Assembly (NCBI GenBank): GCA_047495785.1
Contig: JBLDXI010000015.1
Coordinates: forward strand, 1,364,001-1,428,000
DNA: 64,000 nt
Reading direction: 5' to 3'
Origin: Lepidodermella squamata
Taxonomy: Eukaryota > Animalia > Gastrotricha
The notes under the pieces were generated by a model. The model searched no databases. It was given only the letters and a program-made list of their open reading frames with translations, and was not told the DNA's origin. A program made the position numbers and the translations under genes. Below, one piece after another: positions 34,185-55,888 of the stretch (position 1 is the stretch's first letter; each line of letters begins with the position of its first letter).

Positions 34185-36543
34185 ATGTTGCAAGGCCTTA
34201 TTTTGCGCTCGAATGCGAGTCGAATTGTCGCCCATAATTTGCGTCGATCGCTGCAGAATTCAACCGGTTTGACGAATCAACAGGTTAGTAGAAAAAGCCA
34301 TTTTTAGCGGAACCTAATTTGCCTGTAACAACCGAAAATTTTGGCCCAGGCTAATTTTTTATTTTTTTTCCTCAATAAGGTTCCCTTTCCAAGTAGGATT
34401 TTCTAGGCTTTTAATATTATTTACTTTGAATTAAGGTGATCGGCCATGAATTCATCGAAAATAATTCTAGTTTTATTCCAGTTTTAATTTGGTTTCGTTA
34501 TAGATCTTTCAGCTTTTCCCCTGAAGAAAGCGACCTCGTTTTTTCTATTCTGGAATTTTCTATTTTTTTCTGATTTTTTTCAGTGCGATTTGATATTTTT
34601 CTCCAAAAAAATGAGGTTAATTTCTTATTATTTTTTTTCTACGAAGTCGCCTATGTCTGACACGTGCCCATATTTTTCCAGGTCAATTACAAGCAAAACA
34701 TCGATCGCGAAGACCGGCGGTTAAATTTGAACGCGACGCTAGCCGAATGGGACCCGAAACTGGCCGAGTTGGTGCGGCTGGAAAAACAGCGCCAGCGAGA
34801 GGGCCTCGAACTAATTGCCTCGGAAAACTTCACCAGCTGCGCCGTTCAGCAGGCGCTGGGCTCGTGCCTCGTCAACAAGTACTCGGAGGGCCTGCCAGGT
34901 CATCGCTACTACGGCGGCAATGAATTCATCGATGAGGTCGAGCGGATGTGCCAAAGTCGCGCGTTGAAGTGTTTCGGCCTCAGCCATGAAATGTGGGGCG
35001 TTAACGTACAGGCCTACAGTGGGACGCCGGCTAATATGGCTGTCTACACGGCTGTATTAGGCCCGCATGCTAGGCTGATGGGCCTGGACCTGGCTGAGGG
35101 CGGCCACTTCTCCCACGGCTGGCAGAGTGATACAAAAAAATTGACAGCTTCATCGCTGTACTTCGAAGCCCTGCCGTATAAACTCAACCCGGCTACGGGG
35201 CTGATCGATTACGAGCAAATGGCGGTTAATGCTAAGCTGTTCAGGCCGAAGTTGATTATTGCGGGCGTGAGTTCTTACCCGCGCAACTTGGACTATGCGC
35301 GCATGCGCCAAATTACGGACAGTGTTGGCGCGTATTTGATGGCTGATATGGCGCACATTGCCGGCCTCGTTGCGGCTAAACAGGTGCCAAACCCGTTTGA
35401 TCACTGCGATATTGTCACAACAACCACACACAAGTAAGTATTGATAAACAAATTCAGCGAAGAAAATTCAATTTGTTTGAAATTTGAAATTTTGAAAATT
35501 TAGTTTTGATTTTAATTTAAATTTTAATTTAAATGCAACATTTGTTTTCATTTTTTTGCACAGAAATAAATGTTGACTTCGTTTCAATTTTTCAATTTTT
35601 CAATTTTATTGAATTTTTAAAATTCAGGACTCTTCGTGGTCCCCGGGGTGCTTTGATTTTCTATCGAAAAGGCACAAGGCGTGTTTTACCGAGTGGTGAA
35701 CGCGAGGTTTACGACCTCGAGGCCGCTATCAATGACGCCGTATTTCCCGGCCTTCAGGGTGGCCCGCACGAAAACCAAGTCGGCGCCATAGCCGTCGCCC
35801 TGAAAGAAGCCATGACACCCGAGTTCAACGAGTACCAACGCAACGTGCTAGCCAATGTTCAGGTTATGTGCCGCGAATTCATCGCCCGTGGTTACAAACT
35901 TGTAACAGGCGGGTCTGATGTCCACCTTGCCCTGGTCGATTTACGGCCACTTGGCATCGACGGCGTCACGGTTGAGCGGGTACTGGAGCTTATGAATATA
36001 TCGGTGAATAAGAACGCGCTTCCGGGTGATATGAATGCGGTTAAACCAGGCGGTATTCGAGTTGGATCGGCAGCTTTGACTTCTCGCGGCTTTCAGGAAA
36101 ACGATTTCGTTAAGGTGGTCGACTTCATTCACAAAGGTGAGCAACACTGAAAAATATTAGAATCTATTTGCTAGCTAATTACGGTAATTAGCTAATTAAT
36201 TAAGGTAATTAAGGATTAGCTCAATTTATTAGCTTTTTATTAGTTAATTTTTTTATAAATTTTACGCTTTGGCTGATTGTTACCACTTCATTCAGGTATT
36301 CAATTGGCTCTTGATGTCAAAGCGAATTGCGGTCCCGATGTTCCCAACCCGAGCGCCGATTCCGACTACAACGCTCAGAAAAAGACGCATAAATCCTGGG
36401 TGTCACTCTACAAGTTGTCGCCTCAGTTCCGCGAACATCTTTCTGAGCCGCAATTCGCGAAAAGAATCGCGACCCTGAATCGCGAAGTTCGAACCTTCGC
36501 CCGACAATTCCAAATGCCGGGGCAAACCCATTGCGATCTGTGA
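34185..36543 (+). CDS. SHMT: Serine hydroxymethyltransferase, copy 2 (mitochondrial-type leader)
   Basis: Exon 34185-34283 ([33 protein letters not shown]; Arg/Ser-rich, no acidic residues) splices in phase to 34682. Same SHMT motifs as copy 1 and the same intron after THK. Ends ...[11 protein letters not shown]. Confidence 0.95.
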
Positions 36544-39120
36544 GAAAACTACAAGTTACGCTAAGACTTTGTGCACCCTGTTGTGGATCCTATATGTATA
36601 TCTACATCATAATGGTTTTAAGGAATTTACACTATATATCTCTTGAAATAAAGAAGTATATATCCGAAATATATTGTTTTATTCCTGAAAATTGCGCTGT
36701 AAAAAAATGAGATCTTTTGCAGTATTAGTTGCCAAATTGCATCGATAAGTGTTGGCCGGAATGGTTCAGTGTAAAAGCTAAGACCGGCGCAATAGTTCAG
36801 TGGGCAGCAAGCAACACGTAACTGTTCCCTGGGTCAAACGGCGCCAACGGCCGCTCTCAAAGTGACGAAAATCGATGAGGAAAATCGCTCCAATAACGAG
36901 AGCTTTCAAACGAATGTCAAGGCTAGTAACGACTGAAAGGCAAATCTCAATACATTGCTTATAAATTCTTGTTTGATTTACAAGTGACTGAGTACGGATC
37001 AGTTGGTGCGAAGAGATGCATCTCCATGCCAGTCCAACGCATGGTTACTTCTCCCACAGCATCTGAAGATTCTGCCCTTTGGACACTGAAGGAAACATCC
37101 TGACATCGCGGACAGGCACAACCTCGTCCAGATTGGCAGCAATTGCACGGCAAGCAGTTTGGGCCAACGATTTTCAGCTTAGGTCTTGCGTTGCTTTCGT
37201 CAGCAGGCGAGTCGTAAATGAGATAGACAGTGGAGCAGCAAGAAAATCTAGCTCAAAGTCGAACAAAATTTAGTTTAGTGTGAAGTAGGTTATCCTATCG
37301 AAAAGCAAGCATTCCTAATTACCGGACCCGAGAGTCTTGGAACAGAAGCTTTCTCATAGGATAAGCTACTTCACGCAAAGTTATTTGCTTACTCAGCAAC
37401 TATGAATCCTAGTTCAGTTCCATTAGCTAGTTCAACAGTAGCTGTTGGCCGGGAGTATGAGCAGCATCTAGACTTGCGTCGAACAGTGAAAGCAATCTGC
37501 AGTTGCAAAATTCTAAAATGTTCGCTCAGAAGTTGTGAGAACCCACTCTTCCGGAGCCGTCTTGTGCGTGCATAGCAAAATTTCGCGAAACAGGACATAA
37601 TATCCGGCATTGAAGTTCCGACTCTGTAAAATGAATGATTCAAAATTATTCATGGCTCAAGTTCGAGAGTTGCAAACCTTCACAGATTTTGTAGCAAATC
37701 TCGTTATCTTTTGAAAGAAGCAAAAATTGCTTGGGCAGAAGGCAGGGTGCAGTGGCTGGAGCAGAAACCATGTAAAAATGGTCTGTTAGTATGCCGAAGA
37801 AACTCACTTAGCCAAGTATCCACGACAGGATTTATTGAGAAAGTGTCCAAAGAAGCCAGAGTAGAGATGTCGCCATACTCTGAAGAATAGTCAACAGGAA
37901 CTCGAGCTAAATCTTTCGCTAGATTGGAAGAATATTTGTTTTCCGTTTAAATGATACTCTTTCTGTATACCTGGTTGGTAATTCAACGGTTGAGCAGTAA
38001 TGACGAAAAGCTGCTCGGTCATCATCTTGTCACAAGCTCAGAAGGTGGACAGAATGATAAAAGTCATCGTAAATTTGGCACGCACATTTTTATGACGAAC
38101 CGGTTTGAAGTAGGTAATTGTAATAAAAAAGCTACATCTCACCTACATCGCAGATAGCTTTAACGTAATGTTTACCCGCCAAGTCTAGGTACACAAACGA
38201 ATCGTGATTTGCGCTAGCATGGTGGTGAGAAAAAAATCGATTTATATATCCAGATATGATATTTCGAATTGATTGGTTGACGGCGCGAAGAAACTTGCTG
38301 AAAATAAACACACATACCTGATATTCGGGTATAGTTGAAAGCCATAATGCTGAGTAAACACAGTTTTATATGTCTTTTTTCTTATACTCGGGAGGATCCG
38401 TTATATTTGCTCTAGTGAAGTATTGTCAGAAATGTAAAAGTTATCAGTGCAAACTGCTTCAGCAATCTTGAGGGCAGATAATTCGGGTTTAAAGGGCCTC
38501 GCTTGCTGTTTAATTTGCAAGAAGCCTTCTAGCAATGGAGAAGAAATAATAATAATTAAATGGATTTAAGCGCGGGTGCTTAATGAAATAATAAATGATC
38601 CGACTAGCGAGAAGTAAATGAACAGTGTTCATGACTTTTTTCCAGCCCGAAAAAACCAATACGATAAATAATTAATGGGAAAATGAGCGTATTTTTTGAT
38701 TGCATCAATTTTGCATGAGGGTGATACCGTGTTGTTATTAATGAATTCTATTCATCACATGTTTTTGTAATAGCGATAAGCGCCAATTAAAGCTTTGCCT
38801 TCAGTATTTTGTCGATGGATGAATGAAAGTATCACGGCCGGTTTCACATGCTGCGGTGAGAAAAGGCGCGATATGCTACACCGGAGATTTGATCTCCCGA
38901 GGTGTAGTAGTAATCAATGATGGTGGTTTGAGCGAGCTGTAAATCGATAAATCAAAAATGTGACCTAAATAGAATCAAGGCGTATTTGGACAAATCTGGG
39001 TGTGCAGATGGTTCACCTTTAAGGTCGCATAACGTCTTAGTGACTACGCACACAACATGTGTGTCAACCTTAACGAATACATATCTCAGGATTCAGCTTT
39101 CTCAAATTTCCAATGCTCCA

Positions 39121-40708
39121 ATGATTTTCAAATTATTTGCCTTATCTTTGGTTGTCGCCAAGATTTCCGCTGACCAATACCACTGCGTTTGGTACGATAA
39201 ATGCGCAGCAATAAACGTAGCTGGTAGTCAGGTCTCTTCCCTACCATGCGAATACAATGGATTGGCCAAGCCTCTATCAGACCATGGGGCAGTTAAATTT
39301 CTGAGGTCGACATGCCCTGCCGTGTTTAAGAACCAACGCGAGGCCGCTTTGAAGACCTGTTGCTCTCTAGAACTCATCGAAGCTCTGAAAGACTACTTAC
39401 TTGTCCTCGAGCGTTATTTCGCTCGATGCCAGATTTGCTACCACAACATCGCAAATCTGTTTTGTGCTATAGCTTGCGCCCCAGACCAGTCACGATTTAT
39501 GGGAGATTTAGAAATTCTCTCAACTTTCAACCACGCTGGGCACCATCGTGTTGTAGCTGGTGTCAATGTCTTGAATCTAACGTCGCAAACTCTTCGATCA
39601 GCCTGGCAGTCTTGCGAGAACGTTCGTTATCATGGCGAAGTTGCGGTCAGGAAAATCTTGCCAACAAATCCAACTCTAACTGGGTTTCTCGACTATTTCA
39701 ACGATGCCTCTAATCTATACGTCCCATTCCGGATGAAAATGAAACTAGTGCCCGACAACAAGTTCGGAGTTAATTACGAAACTGTTAGATGTAACGAAAC
39801 TTTCAGAGCTTGCAGTTGGATCGATTGCCCAGATGTAACGCCGCCCAGCCAGCTGTCAGATGAAACAAGTAAAGTGAAGCCTATCCCACCTTCAGCCTGT
39901 AGAGTAAGCAAGAACGGTGCAGTCATCATCGATAGGGCTCATCGAAGTTTTTTCGACCTCCGCTTCAGTCCATTGTTTCGAACGAAGCGAATCTTTCTGC
40001 GGCCCAAGGTTTCCAAGCCCTTCTCCGAAAATTGCGCCTCTTTTGCGCAAAGTTTCGGCTTTTCGACTGTTTTTGAATACGATTTTCTGTCACGGATTAA
40101 CCGTTTAGTTTTGTCTATTCAAAGCCTGACGGCTTCGCACGACGGTAAGACTATTACGGTATCGGACATCTGCCACCAGCCGTGGTATCCAGCTAGCAAG
40201 TATTGCTCAATTCTCCACCCGCTTCAGTTTTTCCAGAATGATAAGATGGCAAGTATTGACGCTTCCCAGCAAGGTGGTGGCGTTCCCTATCATGGTTCTC
40301 TCTGCTACCTTAATCACTTTCTCAACTGCTTCGAATCACATGAGTTTGTAAGTTTATGTCAAGTGCTCTTAATTTTTTACTGAATTTAGTATTCTATTTA
40401 AGACTGGAAATGAGCCCAGTGTGAACGATCACATGCGATGTGCGGGCGATTTCGGAGGTTCCGTGCCCCCATGGCTTGTTTTCTGTGCCTTCGATACGTC
40501 TGAAGCACGCAATGTCACGAAAATCCCCGAGGAAACTCCGGAAAATGAATATCAAACAGCAAAAGTGGCCGTTGTTACCATTCCTCTGCTAAACGGCAGA
40601 ACCGATCGTGAAATCACCATGACAAGTGCGTGGGAAGAGGTTTTCAACGCCTTCATTGGAAATTTTGCCGAAGAGAACAAAGACCACCTCGAAGTTTTGT
40701 TTGATTAA
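39121..40708 (+). CDS. NPC1-like protein lacking all transmembrane segments (signal peptide + N-terminal sterol-binding domain + middle luminal domain)
   Basis: MIFKLFALSLVVAKISA, CVWY..C, PCEYNG.AKPL, CC, RC..CY.N...FC...CAPDQSRF, then directly FFD.RFSP.FRT..I..RP, DIC.QP..P....CSI.HPLQ.FQND, intron 40348-40402, C.GDFGG.V.PWL, AWE.VF. Stop at 40708 with AATAAA at ~40720. Confidence 0.85.
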
Positions 40709-41918
40709 ATGTTTTGCTCAATAAATCGCATTTCAATCTTGGCGTAGTCTTGGCGTATAATTTCATCAGCGTGTGAATCTTTAAATTTCAATTAAACATG
40801 ACGCTTCAGTGATCAACGATTTCAACTCAATGTCATCGTTTGATTCGAAAAATAGCACAATTTCCAAGACTAGAAATTACAGTTAACTTCAAAAGAATCC
40901 GCCATTGTGAAAAGATTGTTCCAGCATGAGCCTAGTTATCGTCGTGTGAATGAATAAATAAACATGAGAAACCAGCAATCCGAATGGTTGCACATTATAT
41001 AGCTGGCACCTTCTTTGGCTGGTTGGTGGTATTTTTGCTTCATCAAATTAAATCCTAAATCCAAAATGCTATTCTACACATCTTTTTATAGGTATGATCA
41101 TGCGGTGGCTTCTCTTTATCTTTGCCCTGATAAAACCGGCTAAAAGTAGAAGTTTTATTGTCTAATCTCCTGCATTTTCATATCAAGCTTACAAAAGTAA
41201 CGACGGTGAATCAGTCTCTTTGAAGAGTATCACGTTAGCAAAACTTGCAGGTCGCTGAGGTTGCGGGTAGCGGTAGATAGCTATCACCTTAATTCCGAAC
41301 TCTTTGCATTTGACTTCTTGATGCCCCAGTATCATTGAAATATTCATTAAACAAATATAATGGCTATATTTGCGCTCGTGGTCTGCATCGTTTATCTATT
41401 TTATCCCACTGAATCATAGATAACAATTGGCTCACTCGCAGAGATCTGAATAATCAGTTGAACTTCGGTCAAGTTAGAAACGGGATAGGATGGATAGGTT
41501 TATAAACTTCCCCACCTGATGTTCCATCCGATTGGCATAGAACTCTGAGCAGCAGTCGATCGCAACAGTGTCGACCATTGTCCGACCACCGGCTTGCTGG
41601 ATGCGCTTCATAACCACGAAAAAGAATAATGAAATTAGAAAAATCGGCACGGTTGACTAAGCTTGCGCCCTGCGCCAAATGTGAGTCTGCTCGACGTCGC
41701 GCGGCCATGAACAGGGCCACAATTTCGCTTTTTCCGTAAATTTCTTCCATGGTCTGTTATTTCTTCTTCTTTTCTTCAATCATCTATTTGTTTACTTTAA
41801 TCTTTCATTCAATCAATTATCATTGCCCAATAAAAGTTTCTCGCAAGCTATTACATCAATCATATCAAAATGTTCTTGAAATCGATTTCCGTTAAATTTC
41901 ATGGGTTGCTTGGAGGCT

Positions 41919-43159
41919 TCAGTTACTTGCTGAAGCAACGCTCGCCGCAACGGCCAGCCCGATGAGGCCACCGTTGTTATTGTTGTTACTCCGCCTCCGT
42001 ACTTCGAACCATCGGAAGTCCTATAATAAAAAAATATTGATGGAGACTATGAATTCTTAGGCAGCTAATTACCATCAGGAATACCGCTCCAATGATCAAA
42101 GCTTTCACCTTAATGTCAATGCTTGGGTTGACTAAATTAAGAAAGTTAATCCCAATTATTCGAGATTCGATGAATTTCACTTGCATTCAACTTTGAAAGA
42201 ATCTGCCGTAGTCCAATAGTGAGTCCACCAACCAAGATAGCGTCGTGTAACAGTTCCCAATTCAGTGGCCATGTCAGGAGAATATATCTTATGAAACACA
42301 GTACATTTGTACAGCTGTCAATGATAAGTCTCATACCTTGAAATCGATGTCTTGGCAACAAGCCTTGCTGCAATTACAGTGAATGCAAGATGGCCCAACA
42401 AATATTGCTACCGTCTGTCCATTGACGTCTACAACTTCCAGCTGGTTTCGCGTACAGAACGGCCTGCGGAATAGCGTGAATAAATGGCACATATGCGAAA
42501 ACGATTCTCACATTTCTTTAACGGTGCCAAGTGGTACCCCACGAGAGGTGATTTCAATCCGCTGAGCAATGCCAGCGCAACAGTCGCAGCAAACGCAGCC
42601 CATGCAGTGCCTAAAAACACGGTGAGCTGAAAGAACAACGGCCCCGGTGTAGTCGGCAATGTGCATAGTGAACTCGCGAGCAGCACCGCAGCATAAAAGC
42701 ATGCTTGCGCTGGTGTCTGTAAATTCATCGATATCAAACGGGTTAAAATGTACTTTCAAAGTCATCACCTTCAGTGACACGATAGCAGACATGGTTTTGT
42801 GGTGTAGAAATTATGTACTGTTTCCTCGTTGAGAAATTGATGGCAACTATTAGGTTACTTGATGAGTTACATTTTCGCTGATTGAAAAGCTGCCTTACTT
42901 TCTAATGGGTCTATGATTTGATCAACGTTGATCGAATTAAGAGCCCCCAGCAATTCCAAACCCGGCAGATTCGAGGTGAATCCTGAAGTCTGTGGTGGAG
43001 CAGCAGCCCAAGCTTGAAACGGCAATTTACGAATTTCTGAGTAAGCTGTAAAGATAAATATAAGAGATATGGCCTTCTGCGATCGAATGAAGTTACGAAA
43101 CCGATAGGCTGCACAGTAACCGCAGGAACAGGCGCTTTTTCCGGCTGAGTAGTGGTCAT
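41919..43159 (-). CDS. Phospholipid scramblase (PLSCR family), paralog B, multi-exon
   Basis: MTTTQPEKAPVPAVTVQP...LPGLELLGALNSINVDQ...VCYRVTE...CCGAAREFTMHI...GCVCCDCC...GPSCIHCNCSKACCQDIDF...WWTHYWTTADSF...KVKALIIGAVFLM|DFRWFE. It shares PAVTVQP and DFRWFE with paralog A. Confidence 0.85.
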
Positions 43160-43895: not shown

Positions 43896-44097
43896 TATAT
43901 CGCGACTTCCGCGCCAGAACAGTGTGCCGGAAATAGAAACCAATGGCGTAATGCATTTGATGCGCAGAAAAAACTGGCGTTCAACTTTTTTTCCAGCGAT
44001 CAGGCACGCGACTGACTTGGCGAAGATGCAAAAAGTTAGTTTTACGCCATTTGTTTCTATTTCCGGCACACTTTTCTGGCGCGGAAGTCGCGATATA
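43896..44097. mobile_element. MITE (~200 bp) with ~56-bp terminal inverted repeats and TA/TATA ends
   Basis: tatatcgcgacttccgcgccagaacagtgtgccggaaatagaaaccaatggcgtaa matches the reverse complement of 44042-44097 with 2 mismatches. Confidence 0.9.
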
Positions 44098-44996
44098 AGC
44101 CGACATTTCTTCTTGGTGTTGGCAGGCGGCCAACAATGGAACTTGCAAGCCTCAAGCAGGGAAGTGTAAAAGTTTGTGTCGTTGAACCATAAATTCTGCT
44201 GACAGCTGGCTCCTTAACTGACTAAGTGATTCCGCGGAAGCAATGTGAATACGTATAACTGATTCTAAAAGCAAAATGATGCCTCATGCAACGTGACGTA
44301 AAACGTTGCTCGTCGAACGTCGAACGCCGAACGTTGAACGTTGAACGATTAATGGGGGGAAAAAGATGCGGCTCGTCCTTGTCATTGTTATTTTTATTCA
44401 GCTGGAAAAATATATTTTATTACTCAGCAGTGCACAAAAAATAATTAAATGCTTTTGGCGCGAGCTTCCAAAATTTGCCCTAGCAACGACGCGGTCTCAG
44501 CTGTTGCTTGCGGACGAATGAGAGTGGCTCGGGGTCAAATCGTGCGATTGTTGTCCGCGCCTTGTTGTCAACTTTGAATACTTGGCGAATGATCAAGCGA
44601 AATCAGAATATCTCTCTGAATCTCTAATTCATTTTCATTCTTCTCCTTCTCGGTCCTTGGTTGCTCATTGTTTTCTCTTATTCGACATTTTGATGTTTCT
44701 CTCATTTAACTTGAATTACGGGTCACGGGTACCACGGATACTTGGTTTCTTCTGATTTTCGTAGCGGTTACTGGATTTGGCAGTTCTTCCTAACGCCGAA
44801 ATAGTTGCTCATTGCAGGAATATTTGGTAGTTTGGTTAATTTCGTTGCTTATAAAAGCCAAAATTAGTCTCCATTGCTTCCCCAAATGCGATGCTGATTT
44901 CCGATTCTAACTTGGATCTCGATTCTCGATTGTCATAATTGAGATCGATCTTTTTCTTATCATTGTCTTCTATCTTATAAATAGACAAATTTAGAA

Positions 44997-47847
44997 ATGG
45001 GAGATACCAACACGTTTTCTGAGACTGAGCTTATGATGTCATCTATAGACCCTACTTCTGCCATCGAACCTCCTATAAATGAAACTCAGGAAGCTGTTGT
45101 AGGAGATGGCGATGTGCAAATACCTGATGAAACAGTACCTGCTGCAGTAACTGAAAATGCCAACCTCCCAGACTTGGAATCCTTTGTCGTGGCGAGTGAT
45201 GACGCTATAAAATTACTCAATTCAATCGACGTGTCTATTTGGCGGTATATTTCTTATACAGATCAGCTCTCAGTGCTCCATCAGAAGCCCCGCGAGCTTG
45301 AAGCGGGTTTGATGCCGGTCGGAAGTTACGCTTTGACAGTTGAACCAGTTTGGTACATGGATTGCGATTGCTACAAAGTAGTCGGTGAGCTCAAATACGA
45401 TCTCCCTGATGCTTCATCTCAATTCACTTTGACATCGTACGTAACTCCCAAGCTCCGCACGCTACATGAAGTTCGAAAGTTACTCTATCGTACAAAGCAG
45501 CAGGTGATTGAACGAAAATCTGAGTTGAAGATTTCCGAAGATGTGATTGGACTGACCAATTCCTCAGTATCATACAACATCAGCTACTCAAGCTTGCTTA
45601 CTACTCCTCAGGCATATATTGCCGGTAATCTCACCCCAGAAACTCGAAATACGCCGATGACTATGCCGCCCGGATTTCTCTCAGAAGGCGCTTCTATCAT
45701 GCTAGATCGAATGCTGGTGCGACGTTTAATGAATAAATCTATTTCATCTGAGCTTCTCAGCAAATTGACATTCGTAGTCATAGCTCCGACGACTGATGGA
45801 ACTGACGATGTGATTAAACCCCCGCAATCTGGCCCACCTATGCCGTCTTTTCTCGCGTTATTAGAACCACCTAAACCCCCGACGAAAAAGTTCCTCTCGC
45901 TGGCATCTCTTGCTTATTCGCGCTTGCCAAGTCGAAGATTTTCGGTGACTGAATCTGAAAATTCGAAGGTTACCGTTGATTTGGAGCTCGTTGGGTTTGA
46001 GCGACTAGTATCCCCGCCTCAAAGTGATGTGTTACCTGTTGTAACGTATTCATATCATCTGGTCGATGGGCATATTGCCATTCATCTTCAAGCTGGCTGC
46101 CCTGTTCAGCTGCAAATTGTCAATGCCCCACTTATTGTCCCTGAAGATCAATTCCTAGACGTGCCAACTATTCCTCGGAAGGAGTTAGATTGGGAAAACG
46201 ATGCTCAATTGCGTGCGGTTTTCGGTGAAAGAACTGATGAGCTGAAGAATGAATTTCAGAGTAAGTTTTAATCCTGTTATGACATATGGCTAACTGCGTT
46301 GTTAAGCTGTCCATTTAAAATTCCAGCGCTTATTTATCGTCTAAATTTCTCTTATGATAAGACCTGTCTGCTTTTAAACAGAAAATGAGATAGGCACGTA
46401 GACAGAGACACTGTTTATTTATGATAATTTGGCGCAATTTTAAATCTAAAGGCAATGCACTGTTCCAGTATTTTGTTGATGTTTTAGATTAGGCGGGTTA
46501 ATTATAAACAAAGATGATATCGCAGCCATGTAAATTTCTAACCCCATGTACAATGCCCAACAAAAAATTTTACAAATTTCTAGCTATCTATATTAGCGCT
46601 TTTTATTAAAATTATTCAAGTAGATATTTAAATGATGTTAAAGTTAAAAAAAGAATAGGAAAACCTTATTGAAAGGGGCTCAACATTCGTTACATTGTTA
46701 ATTTTTCCGGATTCACTGAAACGCGGGAATTCAAATATTTTAATAAATGGCACTCGGACGTGTTTGTCAATTCTCTAAGTTTATTAGGTGTTTATTTATA
46801 GTGGAATCACTTTTCGCCCGTTGTCGTCAATACTGAGGGAGCTGGAAAAAATTCATGATTTGAGAAAAATCTTCACTGGTTTGCATTTTGATTTCGGTCT
46901 TAGGGCTAATTTTCGAAATTCGATTTCGCCTCAATTGAATCTGACACCGGAACGGAAAAATTTGTCCCTGCGAAATATTATATTCGAGATTAATCAGCTC
47001 ATAAAAATCCAGATTACACAGAACTTCAATGATTGAAGTTTTACATCACGGGAGTCGTAAATGTTGTTCTCTAGTAGAGTTCCCGCTCAATTCAACCACC
47101 GAAATCATTCAAAAATGCATATATCACCGAGAATAATTTTTTTCTTGTGGAACGCGGGAAATTTAGATGATTTGGCTCTTGCGACTTGGGGTAAACCATT
47201 ATCCATGTCGCAATCGTAAACTGGCAAAAATTTTTAGCGAAAACCGAAGCCTGGCTTTCAAGGGGTCCAATTTTAATTTGTTTACTATCATTTTTTACCC
47301 AAATCGCTGCCTCAAATTGTTACCAATCAAGGCCGGACCTAAACGTAAACTGGCCTTTATTCTGACCGTTTATAAGGGCGCTCTTTACTCTCTAGACATT
47401 GATACTTTATGTATCAATTGACCTACTGAACTATCTGGTGATCGTTCGTTTTATTGAGCCGGAATGACCCCTTTTACGTCATTTTTTTGTTAGAAATGTC
47501 CTGATATATCTTGACACGTTATTTGCTCTCAGAGATAACGCTCGTGTCATAGTGGGCTCACCTTGATAACAATGAATGTTTACTCAGGTTCTAGTAATAA
47601 TGCTACCAAATAGTACCTGGCGGGCTTCCTATGTGATATCTTGCTATTACTGGCCTTATTAACGCGGACCCTATTGTATTGTCTGACAGGTTTCATCCGC
47701 CACAAGCCGGAACTGCGCGCCCTGCTCGCTGATTTTTTACAGGCGCTGCTGTTGCGCAAACCCGACAATGTCATAGCCTTCGCGGCGCAGTACTTCTCCG
47801 CATTCGGCTCCATGCGGCCGCTGTCGTCGGAGGTCGCCTCAGGCTGA
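44997..47847 (+). CDS. CATIP: Ciliogenesis-associated TTC17-interacting protein (C2orf62-like)
   Basis: GFLSEGASIML.R, and KELDWENDAQL...F..R.DELK.EFQ|SFIRHKPELRALLADFLQALLLRKPDNVIAFAAQYF (C-terminal RIIa-like docking domain) across intron 46261-47689. A further 45-nt in-frame intron at 45567-45611 is possible. Confidence 0.8.
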
Positions 47848-49012: not shown

Positions 49013-52000
49013 ATGAAGATACCTGTTCACAATCGCCGAAATTTGTTGGCAATTTTACTACTAACAACTTGTTGCTCGGCTACTATTTCACTCGCTCAGC
49101 AATGCGTGTGGTACGACAACTGCATGACAACGCTGAAGGGCACGCAGCCGTGTCCGTACAACGGCCCGGCCAAGCCGCTAACCGACCCGGAAGCGATTGA
49201 ATTCCTGCAATCAACATGCCCACTGCTGTTCCCGCCCACGGCCGACGGCTCGTCGACTGGCGTCAACACGTGCTGCTCGAATCAACAAGCGATAACGCTG
49301 AAAACGAGCCTGCAGCCTATGCAGACGTTTTTCTCGCGATGTCCGATATGCTACGCCAATCTAGTGCACATGTTTTGTGCGTTCACGTGCGCGCCCGACC
49401 AGTCACGTTTCATGGGTGACATTGTTACGGCGGAGAAGGATAACGTGACGTATGTTAATGCGGTTGGCATTTTGAATGTCAGTCTCGCGGTTGGCGATGG
49501 CATGTGGGATTCTTGCGTCAACGTTCAATATCCGCAGGTAAGAAAATAATTTAAAAAATTCCGACGAAATTGGACCATTTTGGCAGTAAAATGAAGCATA
49601 AATTTGGGACTTCAGACACAAAAAAGCAAAAAGAAAAGAAAAATTTAGAAATCGAGACAAATTCAAACGAAGTCATAATTTGAGGGTAGTATTGAAATAT
49701 ACCACAAAAATAAGAAAGAATAGTCGCGCTCAGTAAGAAAATGTAAGATGAATCGTTCAGAATAGCGCAAGCTAATTTTGGATAGGGTTACTTTGGACGC
49801 CTTCGGGCTTCACATGTAATTCTTAGGGTATAACCTTGAAACTTCGGCTTTGTTCGCCTTGGTGCAGAAAAAGTTGCAAACAGTGAGACTTTTGATGTCA
49901 GTTTGGTTGTAAGATTTTTTGTGTGAGCAAATATGTTTCGGATTTTTCAAATTTGGCTATGGGCTCTCACCTTTACGCTCTTAGATTGAAGGGAAATCTT
50001 GATTCTGTCTGTGAGTATAAGGTAGTGGCTTTAAGTTCAGGCTTGAAATCGGGTAATTTTTTACTATAAATATTCGACTAAAAAGAATTTCATTTCTGCA
50101 AAATTTGGCTCAACTTTACTCTGACAGGCCGATTTTGCAAATTTAGGTGAACACATTTTAAATGCGAAAAATCGGGTAAACATACAGAAATTCTCCAAAT
50201 TGTAAGAAAAATCAGGAACAATCTTCCTCACCTTAATTTTAATTTTCTTATTTTTTCAGTAAAATTGCAAATTTAAAACTTTGAAAAAACTGTTTTGTTA
50301 CAATTTGTCTTGCTTCTCGAATTTTTGTAATTATTTTAAGCGGAATATATTTTAGCGGAACCAAATTCGAAATATGCCAAGAGTCACTTTTTGAATATTT
50401 CTACGAATTTTGGGCTAAGCATGAATTCTGAATTAAACACTCCGCCATATAGAGAATTTTGCGCTGAATTCACTGAATTCAATTTTATAGAATTATTGTG
50501 GCCAATCTTGACCTGCAATAAATATCCGAAAATCGATTTCAGGCCACTAGAAAAGTCTAAAATTTGGTTCCGCAAAAAGCAAATTAGGTTCCGCTTACAA
50601 GAGGAGCCTTATTTTAAATATTTTTTTTCTCGAACTTGATTTTTTGTTTATAATATGGTTTGGTTATTTGTTGAAAAATTCATAAAATTTGTTTTATTTC
50701 AGGTCAATAAACCTGTAATGAACGTGCTGTTGAACGACAACCCAACCCTAATGGCCTTCCTAAACTTCCTCGGCAACCCAGACAGCCAATACGTCCCATT
50801 CGGCATGAATTTCTCCCTGGTCGACAACGCATCCTATGGCATCTACTACAAGACTTCGAAATGCAACGAAACCAACCCGCAGGCGTGCAGCTGCTCCGAC
50901 TGCCCAACCGCCTGTAAAGCACCCTGGGTCCCTCCCCCGCCCCCACCCGGTCAGTGCCTCGTCTTCGGCAAAATCGACTGCTTCCTGTTCTACTCGAACG
51001 TCGTCGCAGTCGGCGTAGCACTGCTAATCCTCGTCACCTCAGTCGCTTGGGCGTCGATTAAAGGCCCACGCCGGCAACAGCAGTACACAATTGAGGAAGA
51101 AACCGTCCAGCCAAATGCAGAATCGCCCGAGATCAACACGGTTTCACCGTCTGATTTGACGTGGCGTGAAGTCTACGAGCTGAAATTGAGCTCAGCTTTC
51201 CATTTTTGGGGCGTAGTCTGCTGTGCCCACCCGATTAAAATCATGCTAGCCGGGTTTCTGGTCGCAATCGGCCTATCCTGCGGCCTTTTCATGCCGAATT
51301 TGCAGCCGATAACGAACCCTGTTGATCTATGGTCGGCGCCCGGGTCGACCGAACGCCTGCACAAGGACTATTTCGACGAGCATTTCGGGCCGTTTTACCG
51401 CACCGAGCAAATCATCATTCGGCCGGTGAATGTAGGACCTGTTGATTTCACGGACTGCAATACGTTTCAAACGAAAACGCTGTCGCCCGTGTTCAACTAC
51501 ACGTTCTTGTTGCGCGTCTACAACATGGTGCAGGGCATTCAGAAGTTGACGGCCGTTTATCAGGGCAAGAATGTGACCATCAATGACATTTGCCTGCAGC
51601 CGTTGTCGCCGGATAACACCAACTGTTCGATTATGCATCCGCTGCAGTATTTCCAGAATGATTTGGCGAATTTCGACAAAGACTGCTTCCCGGCTCACAT
51701 TTTGAACTGCGCTGAAACTCCGGCATCGGTAAATTTTCATGATTATTTTTCGTATGGTTTGTAGAGAATTTTTAGATTTTCAAAATAATCCGAAAATTTT
51801 GTAAATTTTAATTTTCGAGTTCACTCCAGTTTTTAAATATTTCCAGGTTTTCCATGTTCTAAATTTAAAAAGTCCCCTCAAACTCGATGCTAAAATTTTA
51901 ATTCCTATAATTTGAAATAATTTGAAAGTTTGAATTTTTGTGGCCAAGCCGCACAAATACTCACTTATCAGCTTTTCATTCAAAAAGTTTGAAGTGTACC

Positions 52001-55000
52001 GAGTGAAACCCGGAAAAAACCGGAAAAACCGGAAAAACCCGGAAAAAAACAAGTCACGCAGTCCAGCAAAAATATAGCGTCTTCCGGCTCTAGATTTGGT
52101 CCTTCTGGTTCTTTTCTAAATTTTTTTCAAACGTGGAAAGCGGGCGGATTACCAGAGCAATTCTGAGGTCTCATTAAGGAAATTTCTTCGAATCTCAATT
52201 TTTTAATTTCGAAAATGAATAATCAATTCTGAAGAATCAATGAAGCTCTGCTGATTTGAGCTAATTCGAGGAATCCAGCTTAATTCCTACAATTTTTAGG
52301 GAATTGAATTTTACGCGCCTCATCCACCTTAAAACTAATTTTTAATAATGTTGCCTTGAGGGGGAGGGACTTTCAATACCCTCGGAAGTTTTTTTTAAGT
52401 TATTACCAACCTTCACCTATGAAGTAAATTTTCAAAATAAATGGCCGGTAATTGCCGTAATTTTCCTCTACATTATTAAGATTTTAATTATTTTGATAAA
52501 AAATTCTAATATTTGAACAAATTCGCCACAAATGTTGAAATGTTTAAAATTGATTTTCTGAATTATTTATTGAAATTTTCGAGGTAATTCCTAATTTTCC
52601 ATTCTCTAAAATAATATTGTGTTGTTCAAATTTCAGCCGCAAGATACTGGATACAGCCCGAATATTCCATGCTGGGGCGATTTCGGCGGGCCTGTTTTCC
52701 CATGGCTCATCTACGGCGGCTTCCAAGTGACGCTCGACTACCAAAACCACACGCAGAACGACTACACGACCAGCCAAGCCGTCATCGTCACCGCGCCGGT
52801 CGTCAACCAGAAAACCGACGCCGAAAACGGCAAATCGTTCGCATGGGAAACCGTGTTCATCAACTACATGAAACAATTCGCGATAGACAACGCCGACCTA
52901 CTGGACATTGCCTTCTCAGCCGAACGCTCGATCCAGGACGAAATCGACCGAGAATCGAACGCGCAAATGGCCGTCATCGCCATTTCCTACACGGCCATGT
53001 TCGTCTACATCGCCATAGCCCTAGGCCAGTACCGCAACAAAAGCTGGCGCCAAGTGCTGGTCAGCGCCAAAATCACAGTAGGAATCGCCGGGGTGCTGAT
53101 CGTACTCCTATCAGTCACGGCTTCGCTAGGATTCTGGGCCTTTGTCGGAATCCCGCCTACCCTAATCATTCTAGAGGTCGTGCCGTTCTTAGTCCTAGCA
53201 ATCGGGGTCGATAATATTTTCCTATTGGTCCAATCTTACCAACGCGTTAAGGAGCACAGCTTGAACCAGGACGACGTAGTCGGAAATATCGCGCTGGTCG
53301 TGTCCGAAATTGGGCCATCGATGATGTTGGCCAGTCTGTCCGAGTCTGTTGCGTTTTTCATCGCCGCCCTGTCAACCATGCCGGCCGTTCGCATTTTCGC
53401 GCTCTACGCCGGCATGGCGCTCGTCGTCAATTTCTTCCTGCAAATCTCCACCTTTGTCGCGCTGATGTACCTCGACGCGGTTCGAATGCGCGATTCACGC
53501 CCGGATATTGTTTACTGCGTGCGGCTGGAAGAGCCGAAGACAATGCCGATTGATAAGCAGCGCGAGGAAGAGCTGGACCCGACGCGAAATGACGGCTATC
53601 TATTCTGGTTTTTCCAGCAAATCTACGTGCCAATTATGAGCATTTTCGCGGTTCGAGTCGGCGTTATCATTGTTTTCGTGTTCGCAACTGCCCTATCAAT
53701 CGCGTCGATTTCGCATATGGAAGTCGGGCTGGACCAAAAGCTGTCAATGCCGCATGATTCCTATGTCATTAAGTACTTCACCTACCTTCAGGATTATTTT
53801 GCCGTCGGCGCTCCGGTGTATTTTGTCGTTAAATCGCCGTACAACTACTCTGCCCCGCCGCGGCAGGATTTGTTGTGTTCGTCGACGGGTTGTTCTGAGT
53901 TTTCGTTGGTTAACGAACTGACGGCGCGAGCCGCCTTCCCCAATGTGACGTATATTGCGCAGCCGCCGTCGTCGTGGTTGGATGACTACATCAGTTGGCT
54001 GCACCCTATGTCCGGCTGCTGTGCCTATTCGCAGTCGAAACAGGCGTTTTGCCCGCAGAATGACCGCGGCAATGGCACTGATTGCAAGCCATGCGCTTCG
54101 AAGTAAGTTGAAAAATAATGATATTTTTTTTTAAATTTCTTATTTTATTTTCGGCTAAATTTTTTAAATTTATGAAAATTTCCAGCCATTTAGAAAAAAA
54201 ATCAGAAGAAATTTGATTGAACCGGGTAAAATACCGAAAATTACCGAACTACTTAACATTGGGTTTTTACGGTAAATTCAAAGTCTCTTCAGTGAAATCG
54301 GGTATGAAGGGTGGGTTTGGAAAATCGGATAGACAAAACGGCGGAATTGACCGAAGAAATTAGAAAAAGGTTGCGCGACTCATGGGACACTCTGTAACTT
54401 TCCCTTGTATCGTTCACTTTTTATTAGAAATTTTTAACTTCAAAAATCAAAGAAATTAAAATATGCTGAGGTGAAAATTGAGAAAAATTGAAGAACATTT
54501 ATTTTTCCTTTCCTTTCATTGTAATTCTAAATCTAAATTTCTTGTTGCTTTCTATATTAGCTACATCGATTTCCGACCATCGCCAGACGATTTCAACAAA
54601 TTTCTGCCCTACTTCCTGCTCGACAACCCCGGCGTAAAGTGCAACAAAGGCGGCCACGCGCTGTACAACACGGCTGTTGAAATGGTTGGCAAGACGAATC
54701 AGACGAAACGGGCTGGGGCGACGTACTTCCAGGCCTACCACAGCGTCCTAGTAACATCGGACGATTTTACGAACGCGCTGCGATGGGCGCGTGAATATTC
54801 GGCCAACTTCTCGAAAACCCTCGGCAATGGAACTGAAGTTTTTGCCTACAGTGTTTTCTAGTAAGCTTTTTATTAACTTGAAAATTTCCCTAATTGAATT
54901 TTTCAGAAGTTGATTTTCAATTGAAATTATTAAAATTAAATTTATCAAATTTTTTAAGATGGATTTTTTAAATTAACAAAAATGAGGATTTGAAATTTTT

Positions 55001-55888
55001 GAACTTTTGAACTTTGATTTTTCAATCTTTTGAAAATTTCATTTTTAATCTTTTTTCAATTTTTTTAATAAATTTTTCCAGCGTGTTTTATGAGCAATAT
55101 CTCGACATCGTGAAGCAATCGGCCATCCAACTTGCAATCTGCTCAGCCGCTGTTTTCGTCATTGTTTTCCTGCTAATCGGTCTCGATTTCATCGCTTCGT
55201 TGTTCGTTCTCGTCACCGTCCTGCTTATCCTAACCACAATGGGCGGCGTCATGTACGCCTGGTCAATCACCCTTAACGCTGTTTCACTCGTCAACCTAGT
55301 CGCATGTCTCGGCATTTCAGTCGAATTTTGCGTTCACATCGTCCGCAAATTCGTGCTAAGTCAAGCCAGCTCGCGTCGTGATCGAATGATCGACTCGCTG
55401 ACCCATATCGGCTCGTCTGTACTATCTGGTATCACCTTCACTAAAACTATTGGCGTTGTCGTACTCGCTTTTTCGTCAGCTGACATCTTCAAGGTAAGAA
55501 GATTTTTTCGCAATTTTTCATGAATTTTCGTAAATTATGTTAAGATGAATATTTTCAGAATTTTTACATTTTTAATTTCATTTGTAAAATTCTTGTAAAA
55601 TTCTGTAAAATATGTTTTCCCTTGAATTTTTTTTTTTAATTTTTTAATTTAATTTCTCTAATTATGATTTTTTTACTGTAGGTCTTCTATTTCCGCATGT
55701 TCCTGACTATTGTGCTAGCTGGTGCCGCTTACGGCCTAATTTTTCTACCCGCCGTGCTAAGTTTCATCGGCCCACCCTCGCGGAAGGTCCGGGGTCGGCC
55801 AACCATGAACGGCGCCATGGCCGAACGAGTCGGCACTGCGGATTCGACCTCGACAAACGCGTCGACGCAACGATTCATCAAGCAATAG
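49013..55888 (+). CDS. NPC1: Niemann-Pick C1-type intracellular cholesterol transporter (6 exons)
   Basis: Signal peptide, Cys-rich NTD, Pro-rich linker, TNPVDLWS, YFDEHFGPFYRTEQ, AERSIQDEIDRES, sterol-sensing domain EVVPFLVLAIGVDNIF, GLDQKLSMPHDSY, PSSWLDDY, C.KGGHA, VFYEQY, LNAVSLVNLV, GISVEFC.H, GSSVLSGITFTK, GLIFLP. Exons approximately 49013-49537, 50703-51728, 52637-54102, 54561-~54852, 55082-55493, 55682-55888. Confidence 0.95.
54221..54396. repeat. Partial copy of the MITE found in the SHMT intron
   Basis: accgggtaaaataccgaaaattaccgaac resembles 31711-31740. The end gttgcgcgactcatgggacactctgTA resembles 31878-31903. Confidence 0.6.

What the first reader, a model, noticed from the sequence alone, without database searches (positions are those of the whole stretch)
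39121..40725. Predicted soluble, membrane-free NPC1: NTD fused directly to the middle luminal domain
Seen: relative to the full NPC1 8 kb downstream, this paralog skips the whole TM1-cytosolic loop-TM2 block. It goes from the Pro-rich linker (KPIPPSAC) almost straight to HRSFFDLRFSPLFRT. It stops at NKDHLEVLFD*, the position of NADLLDIAFS, just before AERSI.DE and the sterol-sensing domain. The frame is open, there is a signal peptide, one intron sits at the same position as in NPC1, and a polyA signal follows the stop. In CSCSDCPTAC to CSWIDCPDVT, the two Cys lost are those I recall being disulfide partners in human NPC1 (C240/C247), which suggests coordinated loss in a folded protein. The Gln equivalent to sterol-contacting Q79 is Leu here (CCSLEL vs CCSNQQ). 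Established: the NTD binds sterol and the middle domain docks NPC2 and filovirus GP. Inference: two separate, clean removals of membrane anchors fit a selected secreted or lysosomal lipid carrier, NPC2 adaptor or decoy better than random decay.
Basis: partly seen in the sequence, partly recalled or inferred. Interest (0 to 1): 0.78.

Follow-up and report, generated by a model that had tools for sequence, protein, structure and literature searches.

The report
Membrane-free NPC1 paralog, expressed, in gastrotrich
A small animal (probably the gastrotrich Lepidodermella squamata) transcribes a cut-down copy of the cholesterol transporter NPC1 that keeps only its two outward-facing domains and has no membrane anchor; similar cut-down copies arose separately in molluscs, and none appears in the papers I could search.

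Summary
A two-exon gene (39121-40347 and 40403-40708) encodes 510 residues: signal peptide, NPC1 N-terminal sterol-binding domain, a 25-30 residue linker, then the NPC1 middle luminal domain. It stops exactly where TM3 of NPC1 would begin. No hydrophobic segment reaches membrane-helix strength.

Spliced contigs from two independent public runs remove exactly the predicted 55-nt intron. They run through the stop codon to about 40735, just after AATAAA. The intron has the same position and phase as one in the full NPC1 8.3 kb downstream, so this is a DNA-level partial duplicate and not a retrocopy.

A tree places it with this lineage's own NPC1 (support 100/99) on a branch about four times longer. 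The frame is intact despite about 60% amino-acid divergence, and 18 of 22 conserved cysteines are kept. The lost cysteine pair co-varies across the family.

TM-less NTD-MLD proteins also exist in molluscs, annotated only as "NPC1-like". A common origin with them is rejected.

The function (luminal or secreted lipid acceptor working with NPC2-like carriers) is inference only. Gln79 is replaced and the partner-binding loops have diverged.

Earlier scan notes record other NPC1-derived genes in this genome, but not this architecture.

The parts
39121..39171 (+). Start codon and predicted signal peptide (residues 1-17, cleavage about ISA|DQ)
   Evidence: N-terminal hydrophobic stretch is the most hydrophobic window of the protein. 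It aligns with the signal peptide region of human NPC1, just ahead of the CVWY motif. The first 160 nt or so are not covered by the RNA contigs.
39178..39867 (+). NPC1 N-terminal (sterol-binding) domain, residues 20-249
   Evidence: Pfam PF16414, E 1e-34. AF2 pLDDT is mostly above 90. Foldseek against 3GKH NPC1(NTD): TM-score 0.83, rmsd 2.9.
39868..39933 (+). Pro-rich linker standing where NPC1 has TM1, the cytosolic loop and TM2 (about 135 residues missing)
   Evidence: Alignment with the downstream NPC1 and with human NPC1. No hydrophobic window. AF2 pLDDT below 50 for residues 244-274.
39934..40347 (+). NPC1 middle luminal domain, first part (residues 272-409), with a 12-residue insertion in the second protruding loop
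   Evidence: Pfam PF22314, E 2e-23. PDB domain-C chains 5HNS/5KWY/5F18, E about 1e-13. The insertion is visible and has low pLDDT at residues 380-393.
40348..40402 (+). Intron, 55 nt, GT..AG, phase 0, at the same position as intron 2 of the downstream NPC1
   Evidence: Removed in a 1088-nt contig of run X1. A contig of run X3 ends at 40347 and continues with the first 12 letters of exon 2. Position compared.
40403..40708 (+). Middle luminal domain, second part (residues 410-510), and the TAA stop at 40706-40708
   Evidence: Pfam PF22314 profile positions 139-212 of 216. Alignment ends where NPC1 goes on to AERSIQDE and TM3. X1 contig 40598-40735 is contiguous across the stop.
40720..40735 (+). 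AATAAA polyadenylation signal (40720-40725) and apparent transcript end
   Evidence: Sequence. The X1 contig stops matching at 40735, and X1 depth is zero from 40864 to 41651.
49013..55783 (+). Full-length NPC1 paralog, the closest relative of the short gene: exons 49013-49537, 50703-51728, 52637-about 54103 and further exons
   Evidence: ORFs and splice sites. SSD, Patched and MLD domains by Pfam. 35-45% identity to the short gene. Sister position in the tree.

Best explanation
This is a real, transcribed gene. It descends from a DNA-level partial duplication of this lineage's own NPC1. The copy lost the TM1-loop-TM2 hairpin by in-frame deletion inside an exon. It lost everything from TM3 onward through a stop codon with a new polyA site. 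The product is a 510-residue secretory-pathway protein: signal peptide, NPC1 N-terminal lipid-binding domain, a flexible linker of about 30 residues, and the NPC1 middle luminal domain. It has no membrane anchor, no ER-retention motif and no GPI-type tail, so it should end up in the endolysosomal lumen or outside the cell. Selection has kept the frame and the disulfide framework while the protein evolved fast. Inferred, not shown: it acts as a soluble acceptor or buffer for sterol-like lipids delivered by the genome's many NPC2-like carriers. In that role it would use the same dock-and-hand-off geometry as NPC1 (middle domain docks the carrier, N-terminal domain takes the lipid), but without passing the lipid into a membrane. 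Ligand or partner specificity has probably changed: the Gln79 equivalent is Leu and the docking loops are remodelled.
For: Architecture. Both domains are known to fold alone as soluble proteins (PDB 3GKH for the NTD; 5HNS, 5KWY and 5F18 for the MLD). The AF2 model gives a confident NTD, a disordered linker and no extra helix.

Expression: X1 and X3 behave as RNA. Their contigs skip GT..AG or CT..AC introns in two genes, intergenic depth is zero, and there are polyA and template-switch-like loose ends. Both runs show the predicted splice, and an X1 contig runs through the stop to 40735.

Not a retrocopy: the phase-0 intron is shared with the downstream NPC1. No relic of SSD or CTD lies between 40709 and 48900.

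Descent: the gene groups with the window's NPC1 and a related species' NPC1 at 100/99.

Selection: dN to the neighbour is 0.54 and dS is saturated. In simulations of neutral change, only 0.55% of frames stay open at 0.1 substitutions per site and none at 0.2 or more. 52 of 71 near-invariant NPC1 columns and 18 of 22 conserved Cys are kept. The one paralog-specific Cys loss removes both members of a co-varying pair. The frame is intact in a second isolate, with 5 synonymous and 6 conservative non-synonymous differences.

Convergence: TM-less NTD-MLD proteins with the same end point exist in at least five mollusc genera, and one is carried whole on an mRNA-sized contig. Possible partners: 16 ML/NPC2-like matches in the genome.
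Against: The branch is about four times longer than its sister's (1.65 against 0.37), which would also fit relaxed constraint. The Gln79 equivalent, conserved in at least 85% of full-length NPC1s and in all mollusc short forms, is Leu here. The two protruding loops of the middle domain are the most diverged parts. No ortholog was found in the syntenic region of a related species or in the large protein library, although that library also lacks this protein itself. The polymorphism ratio is not significantly below neutral (5 of 11 synonymous, p 0.08). The RNA evidence comes from assembled contigs. It cannot prove transcript ends, does not cover the first 160 nt or so of the CDS, and the runs' RNA status is a guess by the tool. 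No binding or localisation was tested.
Confidence: 0.72

Rival explanations
1. It is a transcribed but functionless remnant: a partial duplicate of NPC1 on its way to decay, whose open frame and splicing are residual.
For: Fast evolution. Loss of the Gln79 equivalent and remodelled loops. No ortholog found. Polymorphism ratio not significantly below neutral.
Against: At the observed divergence (dN 0.54, dS saturated) a neutral frame of 510 codons would carry many stops (mean 5.5 at 0.1 substitutions per site; none of 2000 stay open at 0.2 or more). Conserved cysteines and core motifs are kept at 73%, against about 40% overall identity. Cysteines were lost as a pair. Signal peptide, splice sites, stop and polyA signal are all in working order. 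The same architecture is kept in several mollusc lineages. Only a very recent loss of function remains possible.
Confidence: 0.15
2. The gene model is incomplete: the two exons are the 5' part of a longer transcript, for instance an alternative first part of the downstream NPC1, that does encode membrane segments.
For: The full NPC1 lies on the same strand 8.3 kb downstream. Contigs cannot prove absence of rare isoforms.
Against: An RNA contig is contiguous from 40598 through the stop codon and the AATAAA to 40735, and X1 depth is then zero for about 800 nt. An opposite-strand spliced gene (41818-43136), a repeat and a same-strand CATIP_N gene (44997-46271) lie in between. The downstream NPC1 has its own ATG, signal peptide and N-terminal domain. 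There is no SSD- or CTD-like coding sequence between 40709 and 48900.
Confidence: 0.05
3. It is functional, but not in lipid hand-off. It might be a decoy or recognition protein that uses the middle domain's protruding loops as a binding surface (the surface filovirus glycoproteins use on human NPC1), or a regulator that competes with NPC1 for NPC2-like proteins.
For: The sterol 3-OH-contacting Gln is lost and the loops carry a 12-residue insertion, which suggests a changed binding surface and possibly a changed ligand. The ML/NPC2-like family is expanded.
Against: Nothing tests it. The N-terminal domain fold and pocket-lining Pro-Phe motif are kept with high model confidence, which argues that the pocket still matters.
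Confidence: 0.08

Closest known systems
NPC1 / NPC1L1 / yeast NCR1 (13-TM lysosomal sterol transporters; PDB 3JD8, 6W5R, 6V3F, 6R4L)
   Same: Homologous N-terminal domain and middle luminal domain (Pfam and PDB hits). Shares an intron position with the neighbouring NPC1 and nests inside this lineage's NPC1 clade.
   Different: Lacks all 13 TM helices, the sterol-sensing domain and the C-terminal luminal domain. It therefore cannot move sterol into or across a membrane. The Gln79 equivalent is Leu.
Mollusc 'NPC intracellular cholesterol transporter 1-like' short proteins (Littorina saxatilis XP_070208614.1, Argopecten irradians XP_069106602.1, Pecten maximus, Bulinus truncatus, Saccostrea echinata)
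   Same: Same architecture: signal peptide, NTD, short linker, MLD, ending at the TM3 boundary, with no internal TM. The pectinid forms have lost the same Cys pair.
   Different: Independent origin. The window's gene groups with gastrotrich NPC1s at 100/99, and a single clade of all short forms is rejected (p-AU 8e-87). The mollusc forms keep Gln79. The pectinid ones end in a hydrophobic, GPI-like tail. They are annotated automatically, and the papers I could search do not describe them.
Recombinant soluble NPC1 domains used in structural work (NTD: 3GKH; domain C/MLD: 5HNS, 5KWY with NPC2, 5F1B with Ebola GP)
   Same: The natural protein's domain boundaries match those of the engineered soluble constructs. 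This shows that both modules fold without the membrane part.
   Different: Here the two modules are joined in one natural polypeptide and encoded by a gene. The laboratory constructs are separate fragments.
NTD-plus-single-TM genes of the same genome (C3, C20:1214276, C17 cluster)
   Different: They keep one TM helix and a cytosolic tail and have no middle luminal domain. The window's gene is the only NTD-MLD copy without an SSD in the genome.
NPC2 / ML-domain proteins (soluble luminal sterol carriers)
   Same: Possible functional analogy: a small secretory-pathway protein that binds sterol in the lumen.
   Different: Unrelated fold and family. The paralog has no PF02221 match. NPC2-like genes are separate and numerous here.

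Membership tests
NPC1 family of sterol transporters | N-terminal sterol-binding domain (PF16414) | tested here: met
   E 1e-34, residues 20-249; Foldseek against 3GKH, TM-score 0.83
NPC1 family of sterol transporters | Middle luminal domain (PF22314) | tested here: met
   E 2e-23 and 6e-10 over the two exons; PDB domain-C hits
NPC1 family of sterol transporters | Thirteen TM helices including the sterol-sensing domain (PF12349 / PF02460) | tested here: not met
   No Pfam hit; no hydrophobic window at or above 1.6; no SSD-like coding sequence up to 48900
NPC1 family of sterol transporters | C-terminal luminal domain | tested here: not met
   The protein ends at the MLD/TM3 boundary; no downstream relic
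NPC1 family of sterol transporters | Descent from NPC1 (homology by tree and shared intron) | tested here: met
   100/99 grouping with this lineage's NPC1; identical phase-0 intron position
Mollusc TM-less NTD-MLD 'NPC1-like' proteins | Architecture: signal peptide, NTD, short linker, MLD, no internal TM | tested here: met
Mollusc TM-less NTD-MLD 'NPC1-like' proteins | Common descent with those proteins | tested here: not met
   Tree; one clade of all short forms rejected, delta lnL 167, p-AU 8e-87
Processed pseudogene / retrocopy | No introns, copy of a mature mRNA | tested here: not met
   Keeps and splices an ancestral intron
Sterol-binding NTD (functional) | Gln79-equivalent that contacts the sterol 3-hydroxyl (role recalled from the human NTD literature, not checked here) | tested here: not met
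   Leu at that column; Gln in at least 85% of full-length NPC1s and in all mollusc short forms
Sterol-binding NTD (functional) | Actual sterol binding | not testable with these tools
   Needs recombinant protein and a binding assay

The most novel reading that the evidence does not exclude
Soluble NTD-MLD proteins are a recurrent, so far undescribed class of secreted or luminal lipid-transfer proteins. They would be made repeatedly (gastrotrich, several mollusc lineages) by stripping NPC1 of its membrane part. They would act as a single-chain dock-and-accept module for NPC2-like carriers, giving a natural minimal system for the NPC2-to-NPC1 hand-off.
Probability: 0.3. Interest if true: 0.75.

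Novelty: new variant of a known kind. Interest (0 to 1): 0.52.

Why it matters
NPC1 is studied as a membrane machine, and its two luminal modules have been made soluble only in the laboratory. This is a natural gene that joins exactly those two modules, is transcribed, and has been kept open over a long divergence. Look-alikes that arose independently in molluscs suggest the membrane-free combination is useful in its own right. If it binds lipid and NPC2-like partners, it would be a compact soluble model of the hand-off step. It would also point to an unrecognised layer of extracellular or luminal sterol handling in invertebrates. If it does not, it is still a clean example of domain-level gene birth by partial duplication.

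Tried and rejected
1. The search for homologous proteins on the exon-1 product found nothing in the 225-716 aa range. The later HMMER search showed that relatives exist but share too few exact words.

2. The protein atlas gave only fragment clusters, scores 0.83 and 0.77.

3. The top hit of the big search, P0001 (533 aa), looked like an ortholog by length. It is a fragment of a normal NPC1 with TM1 and TM2 from a metagenomic relative.

4. Synteny search: the relative keeps the CATIP_N-NPC1 adjacency but has no short copy within 10 kb.

5. dN/dS: synonymous sites are saturated in all three comparisons, so no ratio can be given.

6. Timing of the duplication: the tree puts it before the split from the metagenomic relative (95/83), but the alternative is not rejected (p-AU 0.136).

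7. Nematode SL1 search, to place the organism: no match.

8. Complex prediction of the paralog (as its two exon products) with one complete NPC2-like protein (L016): no verdict, score 0.26 against a mark of 0.34. This is not evidence either way.

9. Literature searches for soluble or truncated NPC1, the Pfam names, and mollusc NPC1 found no description of this architecture. Short cestode NPC1s are contig-end fragments and do have TM segments. A search for the C240-C247 disulfide found nothing usable, so covariation was used instead.

10. A fold of the whole 510-residue protein was left out, because the spliced sequence has no reference. Only the exon-1 product was folded.

Full report
**What is there.** Reading from the ATG at 39121, exon 1 runs to 40347. 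A GT..AG intron of 55 nt follows (40348-40402). Exon 2 runs from 40403 to a TAA at 40706-40708. The spliced frame is open for 510 codons.

Pfam finds NPC1_N at residues 20-249 (E 1e-34). It finds NPC1_MLD over residues 275-406 and over the exon-2 product (E 2e-23 and 6e-10), and nothing else. Against solved structures, residues 12-128 align with human NPC1 15-122 and residues 272-404 with human 389-517. The stretch that in NPC1 holds TM1, the cytosolic loop and TM2 is therefore absent.

**Comparison with the neighbouring NPC1.** The window carries a full NPC1 whose ATG is at 49013, 8.3 kb downstream. It has sterol-sensing and Patched domains. Aligned with it, the short gene replaces about 135 residues with a Pro-rich linker of about 30 residues. 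It stops exactly where NPC1 continues with AERSIQDE and TM3.

No 19-residue window of the short protein reaches a Kyte-Doolittle mean of 1.6. The maximum, 1.33, is the N-terminal signal sequence. The missing block of the neighbour has two segments that score up to 2.44. The C-terminus has no hydrophobic tail and no KDEL-type motif. Three N-glycosylation sequons are present.

- The human Gln79 equivalent is Leu. It is Gln in the neighbour, in at least 85% of full-length NPC1s sampled and in all mollusc short forms.
- Both cysteines equivalent to human C240 and C247 are gone.
- I could not find the disulfide map in the searchable papers. Across 79 family members the two positions co-vary: 66 have both, 10 have neither, 3 have one (Fisher p 5e-10). 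That is what a disulfide pair predicts.
- A second missing pair (human C177/C184 positions) is missing in all gastrotrich NPC1s, so it predates the duplication.

**Is it a gene?** Three public runs hold the stretch. X2 behaves as DNA, with even depth and introns present. X1 and X3 behave as RNA, although the tool only guesses their kind:
- their contigs skip GT..AG or CT..AC introns in this gene and in the neighbouring minus-strand gene;
- intergenic depth is zero;
- loose ends include a poly-A run and a template-switch-like oligo.

An X1 contig of 1088 nt covers 39485-40347 joined directly to 40403-40627, which is exactly the predicted splice. An X3 contig from a different study ends at 40347 and continues with the first twelve letters of exon 2. 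Another X1 contig is contiguous from 40598 through the stop codon and the AATAAA (40720-40725) to 40735. After that, X1 depth is zero until 41652.

Between the short gene and NPC1 lie three features:
- an opposite-strand spliced gene (41818-43136);
- a high-copy repeat (about 43900-44100);
- a CATIP_N gene (44997-46271).

No SSD- or CTD-like coding remnant lies between 40709 and 48900. Reading on into membrane exons is therefore unlikely. Two caveats apply. Contigs cannot prove transcript ends or exclude rare isoforms, and the first 160 nt or so of the CDS have no RNA coverage.

**Origin.** The single intron sits at the same aligned column and phase (0) as intron 2 of the neighbouring NPC1 and as the intron of a related species' NPC1. 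The copy therefore arose at the DNA level and is not a retrocopy. Neither deletion coincides with an exon boundary of the neighbour.

I take this as probable, not proven. The genome holds:
- three full NPC1 genes (C15, C20, C55);
- this one NTD-MLD gene;
- several NTD-plus-single-TM genes.

In a maximum-likelihood tree of 28 NTD+MLD sequences, the short gene groups with the window's NPC1 and its ortholog from a metagenomic relative (100/99). That group sits inside a gastrotrich clade with the C20 gene (100/99). The short gene's end branch is 1.65, against 0.37 for its sister. The tree places the duplication before the split from the relative (95/83), but the alternative is not rejected (p-AU 0.136).

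**Selection.**
- Synonymous sites are saturated in all comparisons, so no dN/dS can be given. dN is 0.54 to either NPC1 and 0.32 between the two NPC1s.
- Simulated neutral change leaves only 0.55% of frames open at 0.1 substitutions per site and none of 2000 at 0.2 or more. The open frame therefore implies long-term selection.
- 52 of 71 columns that are near-invariant in full-length NPC1s are kept, as are 18 of 22 conserved cysteines, against about 40% overall identity.
- A second isolate's DNA contig keeps the frame. The listed differences are 5 synonymous and 6 conservative non-synonymous, which is not significantly different from neutral (p 0.08).
- No ortholog was found. There is none within 10 kb of the relative's NPC1, where the CATIP_N-NPC1 adjacency is conserved. 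None is closer than 43% identity among 1.84 billion representative proteins. That library also lacks this protein itself, so the absence is weak evidence.

**The architecture elsewhere.** The HMMER search turned up proteins in which the NTD runs straight into the MLD. They are mollusc proteins annotated "NPC intracellular cholesterol transporter 1-like":
- Littorina saxatilis, 495 aa;
- Argopecten irradians, 532 aa;
- Pecten maximus, 535 aa;
- Bulinus truncatus, 505 aa;
- Saccostrea echinata, 439 aa;
- Haliotis rubra, 406 aa;
- the N-terminal part of a fused Mya arenaria gene model;
- two unnamed transcript-assembly proteins.

They have a signal peptide and no internal TM. The pectinid ones end in a hydrophobic, GPI-like tail. 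One is carried whole on a 1753-nt, intron-free contig. They end at the same MLD/TM3 boundary, and the pectinid forms have lost the same Cys pair.

They are not orthologs of the window's gene. A single clade of all short forms is rejected (delta lnL 167, p-AU 8e-87). Even the mollusc forms alone are rejected as one clade (p 6e-5). That group was named after seeing the tree, and gene conversion with tandem full-length copies could mimic this result. I found no paper that describes such proteins. Short cestode NPC1s are contig-end fragments and contain TM segments.

**Structure.** An AlphaFold2 model of the exon-1 product, built with a 37-sequence alignment, has mean pLDDT 80:
- the NTD is mostly above 90;
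- residues 244-274 (the linker) are below 50;
- the partial MLD scores 77-91;
- residues 380-393 are below 50; these are a 12-residue insertion in the second protruding loop, the region that contacts NPC2 and filovirus glycoprotein in human NPC1.

Foldseek matches NPC1(NTD) 3GKH at TM-score 0.83. It matches domain-C structures (5F18, 5HNS, 5KWY) at about 0.47, as expected for two thirds of that domain. The whole spliced protein could not be folded because it has no reference.

**How it most likely works.** Shown: a transcribed, spliced, selection-maintained gene for a TM-less, signal-peptide-bearing NTD-linker-MLD protein. Established from the solved structures named above: the NTD holds sterol, the MLD docks NPC2, and both fold as isolated soluble domains.

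Inferred: the protein travels the secretory pathway to the endolysosomal lumen or the outside. There it docks one or more of the genome's many ML/NPC2-like proteins (16 matches) and accepts or buffers a sterol-like lipid, without being able to pass it into a membrane. The Leu at the Gln79 position and the remodelled loops suggest changed ligand or partner specificity. One complex prediction with one NPC2-like protein gave no verdict.

**Verdict.** The function is open. The protein belongs to the NPC1 family by descent but fails the family's defining membrane features. It is best filed as a new variant of a known kind: a natural soluble mini-NPC1 that arose here independently of undescribed mollusc look-alikes.

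Noticed in passing
Proteins P0010, P0014/P0151, P0154, P0157, P0034, P0063, P0006 (1-470), P0004, P0002; locus L017: Molluscs carry TM-less NTD-MLD 'NPC1-like' proteins. In the tree they are scattered among mollusc full-length NPC1s, and one clade is rejected (p 6e-5). This suggests repeated origin, or gene conversion with tandem full copies. The pectinid forms end in a GPI-like hydrophobic tail.
   Followed up: partly
L005 (G000:C3:3678850-3682422), L006 (C20:1212776-1216381), L008-L010 (C17, five copies): Genes with an NPC1 N-terminal domain followed by a single TM helix and a tail, with no middle domain. This is a second kind of NPC1 truncation in the same genome; the C20 one lies about 8 kb from a full NPC1.
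   Followed up: partly
window 30735-31487 and 34664-36150: Two tandem serine hydroxymethyltransferase (SHMT) genes upstream of the short NPC1 gene, so local tandem duplication is common in this stretch.
   Followed up: no
window 41818-43136, minus strand: Spliced gene with seven introns of about 50 nt (CT..AC on the + strand) and much deeper RNA contigs than the NPC1 paralog. A single exon gave no Pfam match, so it remains unidentified.
   Followed up: no
window about 43900-44100: High-copy repeat: summed contig depth about 7900 in the DNA run against about 96 for the flanks, with many alternative joints.
   Followed up: no
window 44997-46271 and L013:8043-9500: A CATIP_N-domain gene sits directly upstream of NPC1 both here and in a metagenomic relative (46% identity). 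This is conserved micro-synteny that excludes the short paralog.
   Followed up: partly
G000 genome-wide: At least 27 sterol-sensing-domain matches and 16 ML/NPC2-like matches, several in clusters (C13, C45, C7, C30). Both families are strongly expanded.
   Followed up: no
window 39086-39308: The DNA run X2 holds two contigs for this stretch, one with 14 differences in 223 nt. This is a divergent haplotype over the 5' UTR and signal peptide of the short gene (F6L, S9F, V11V among those listed).
   Followed up: partly
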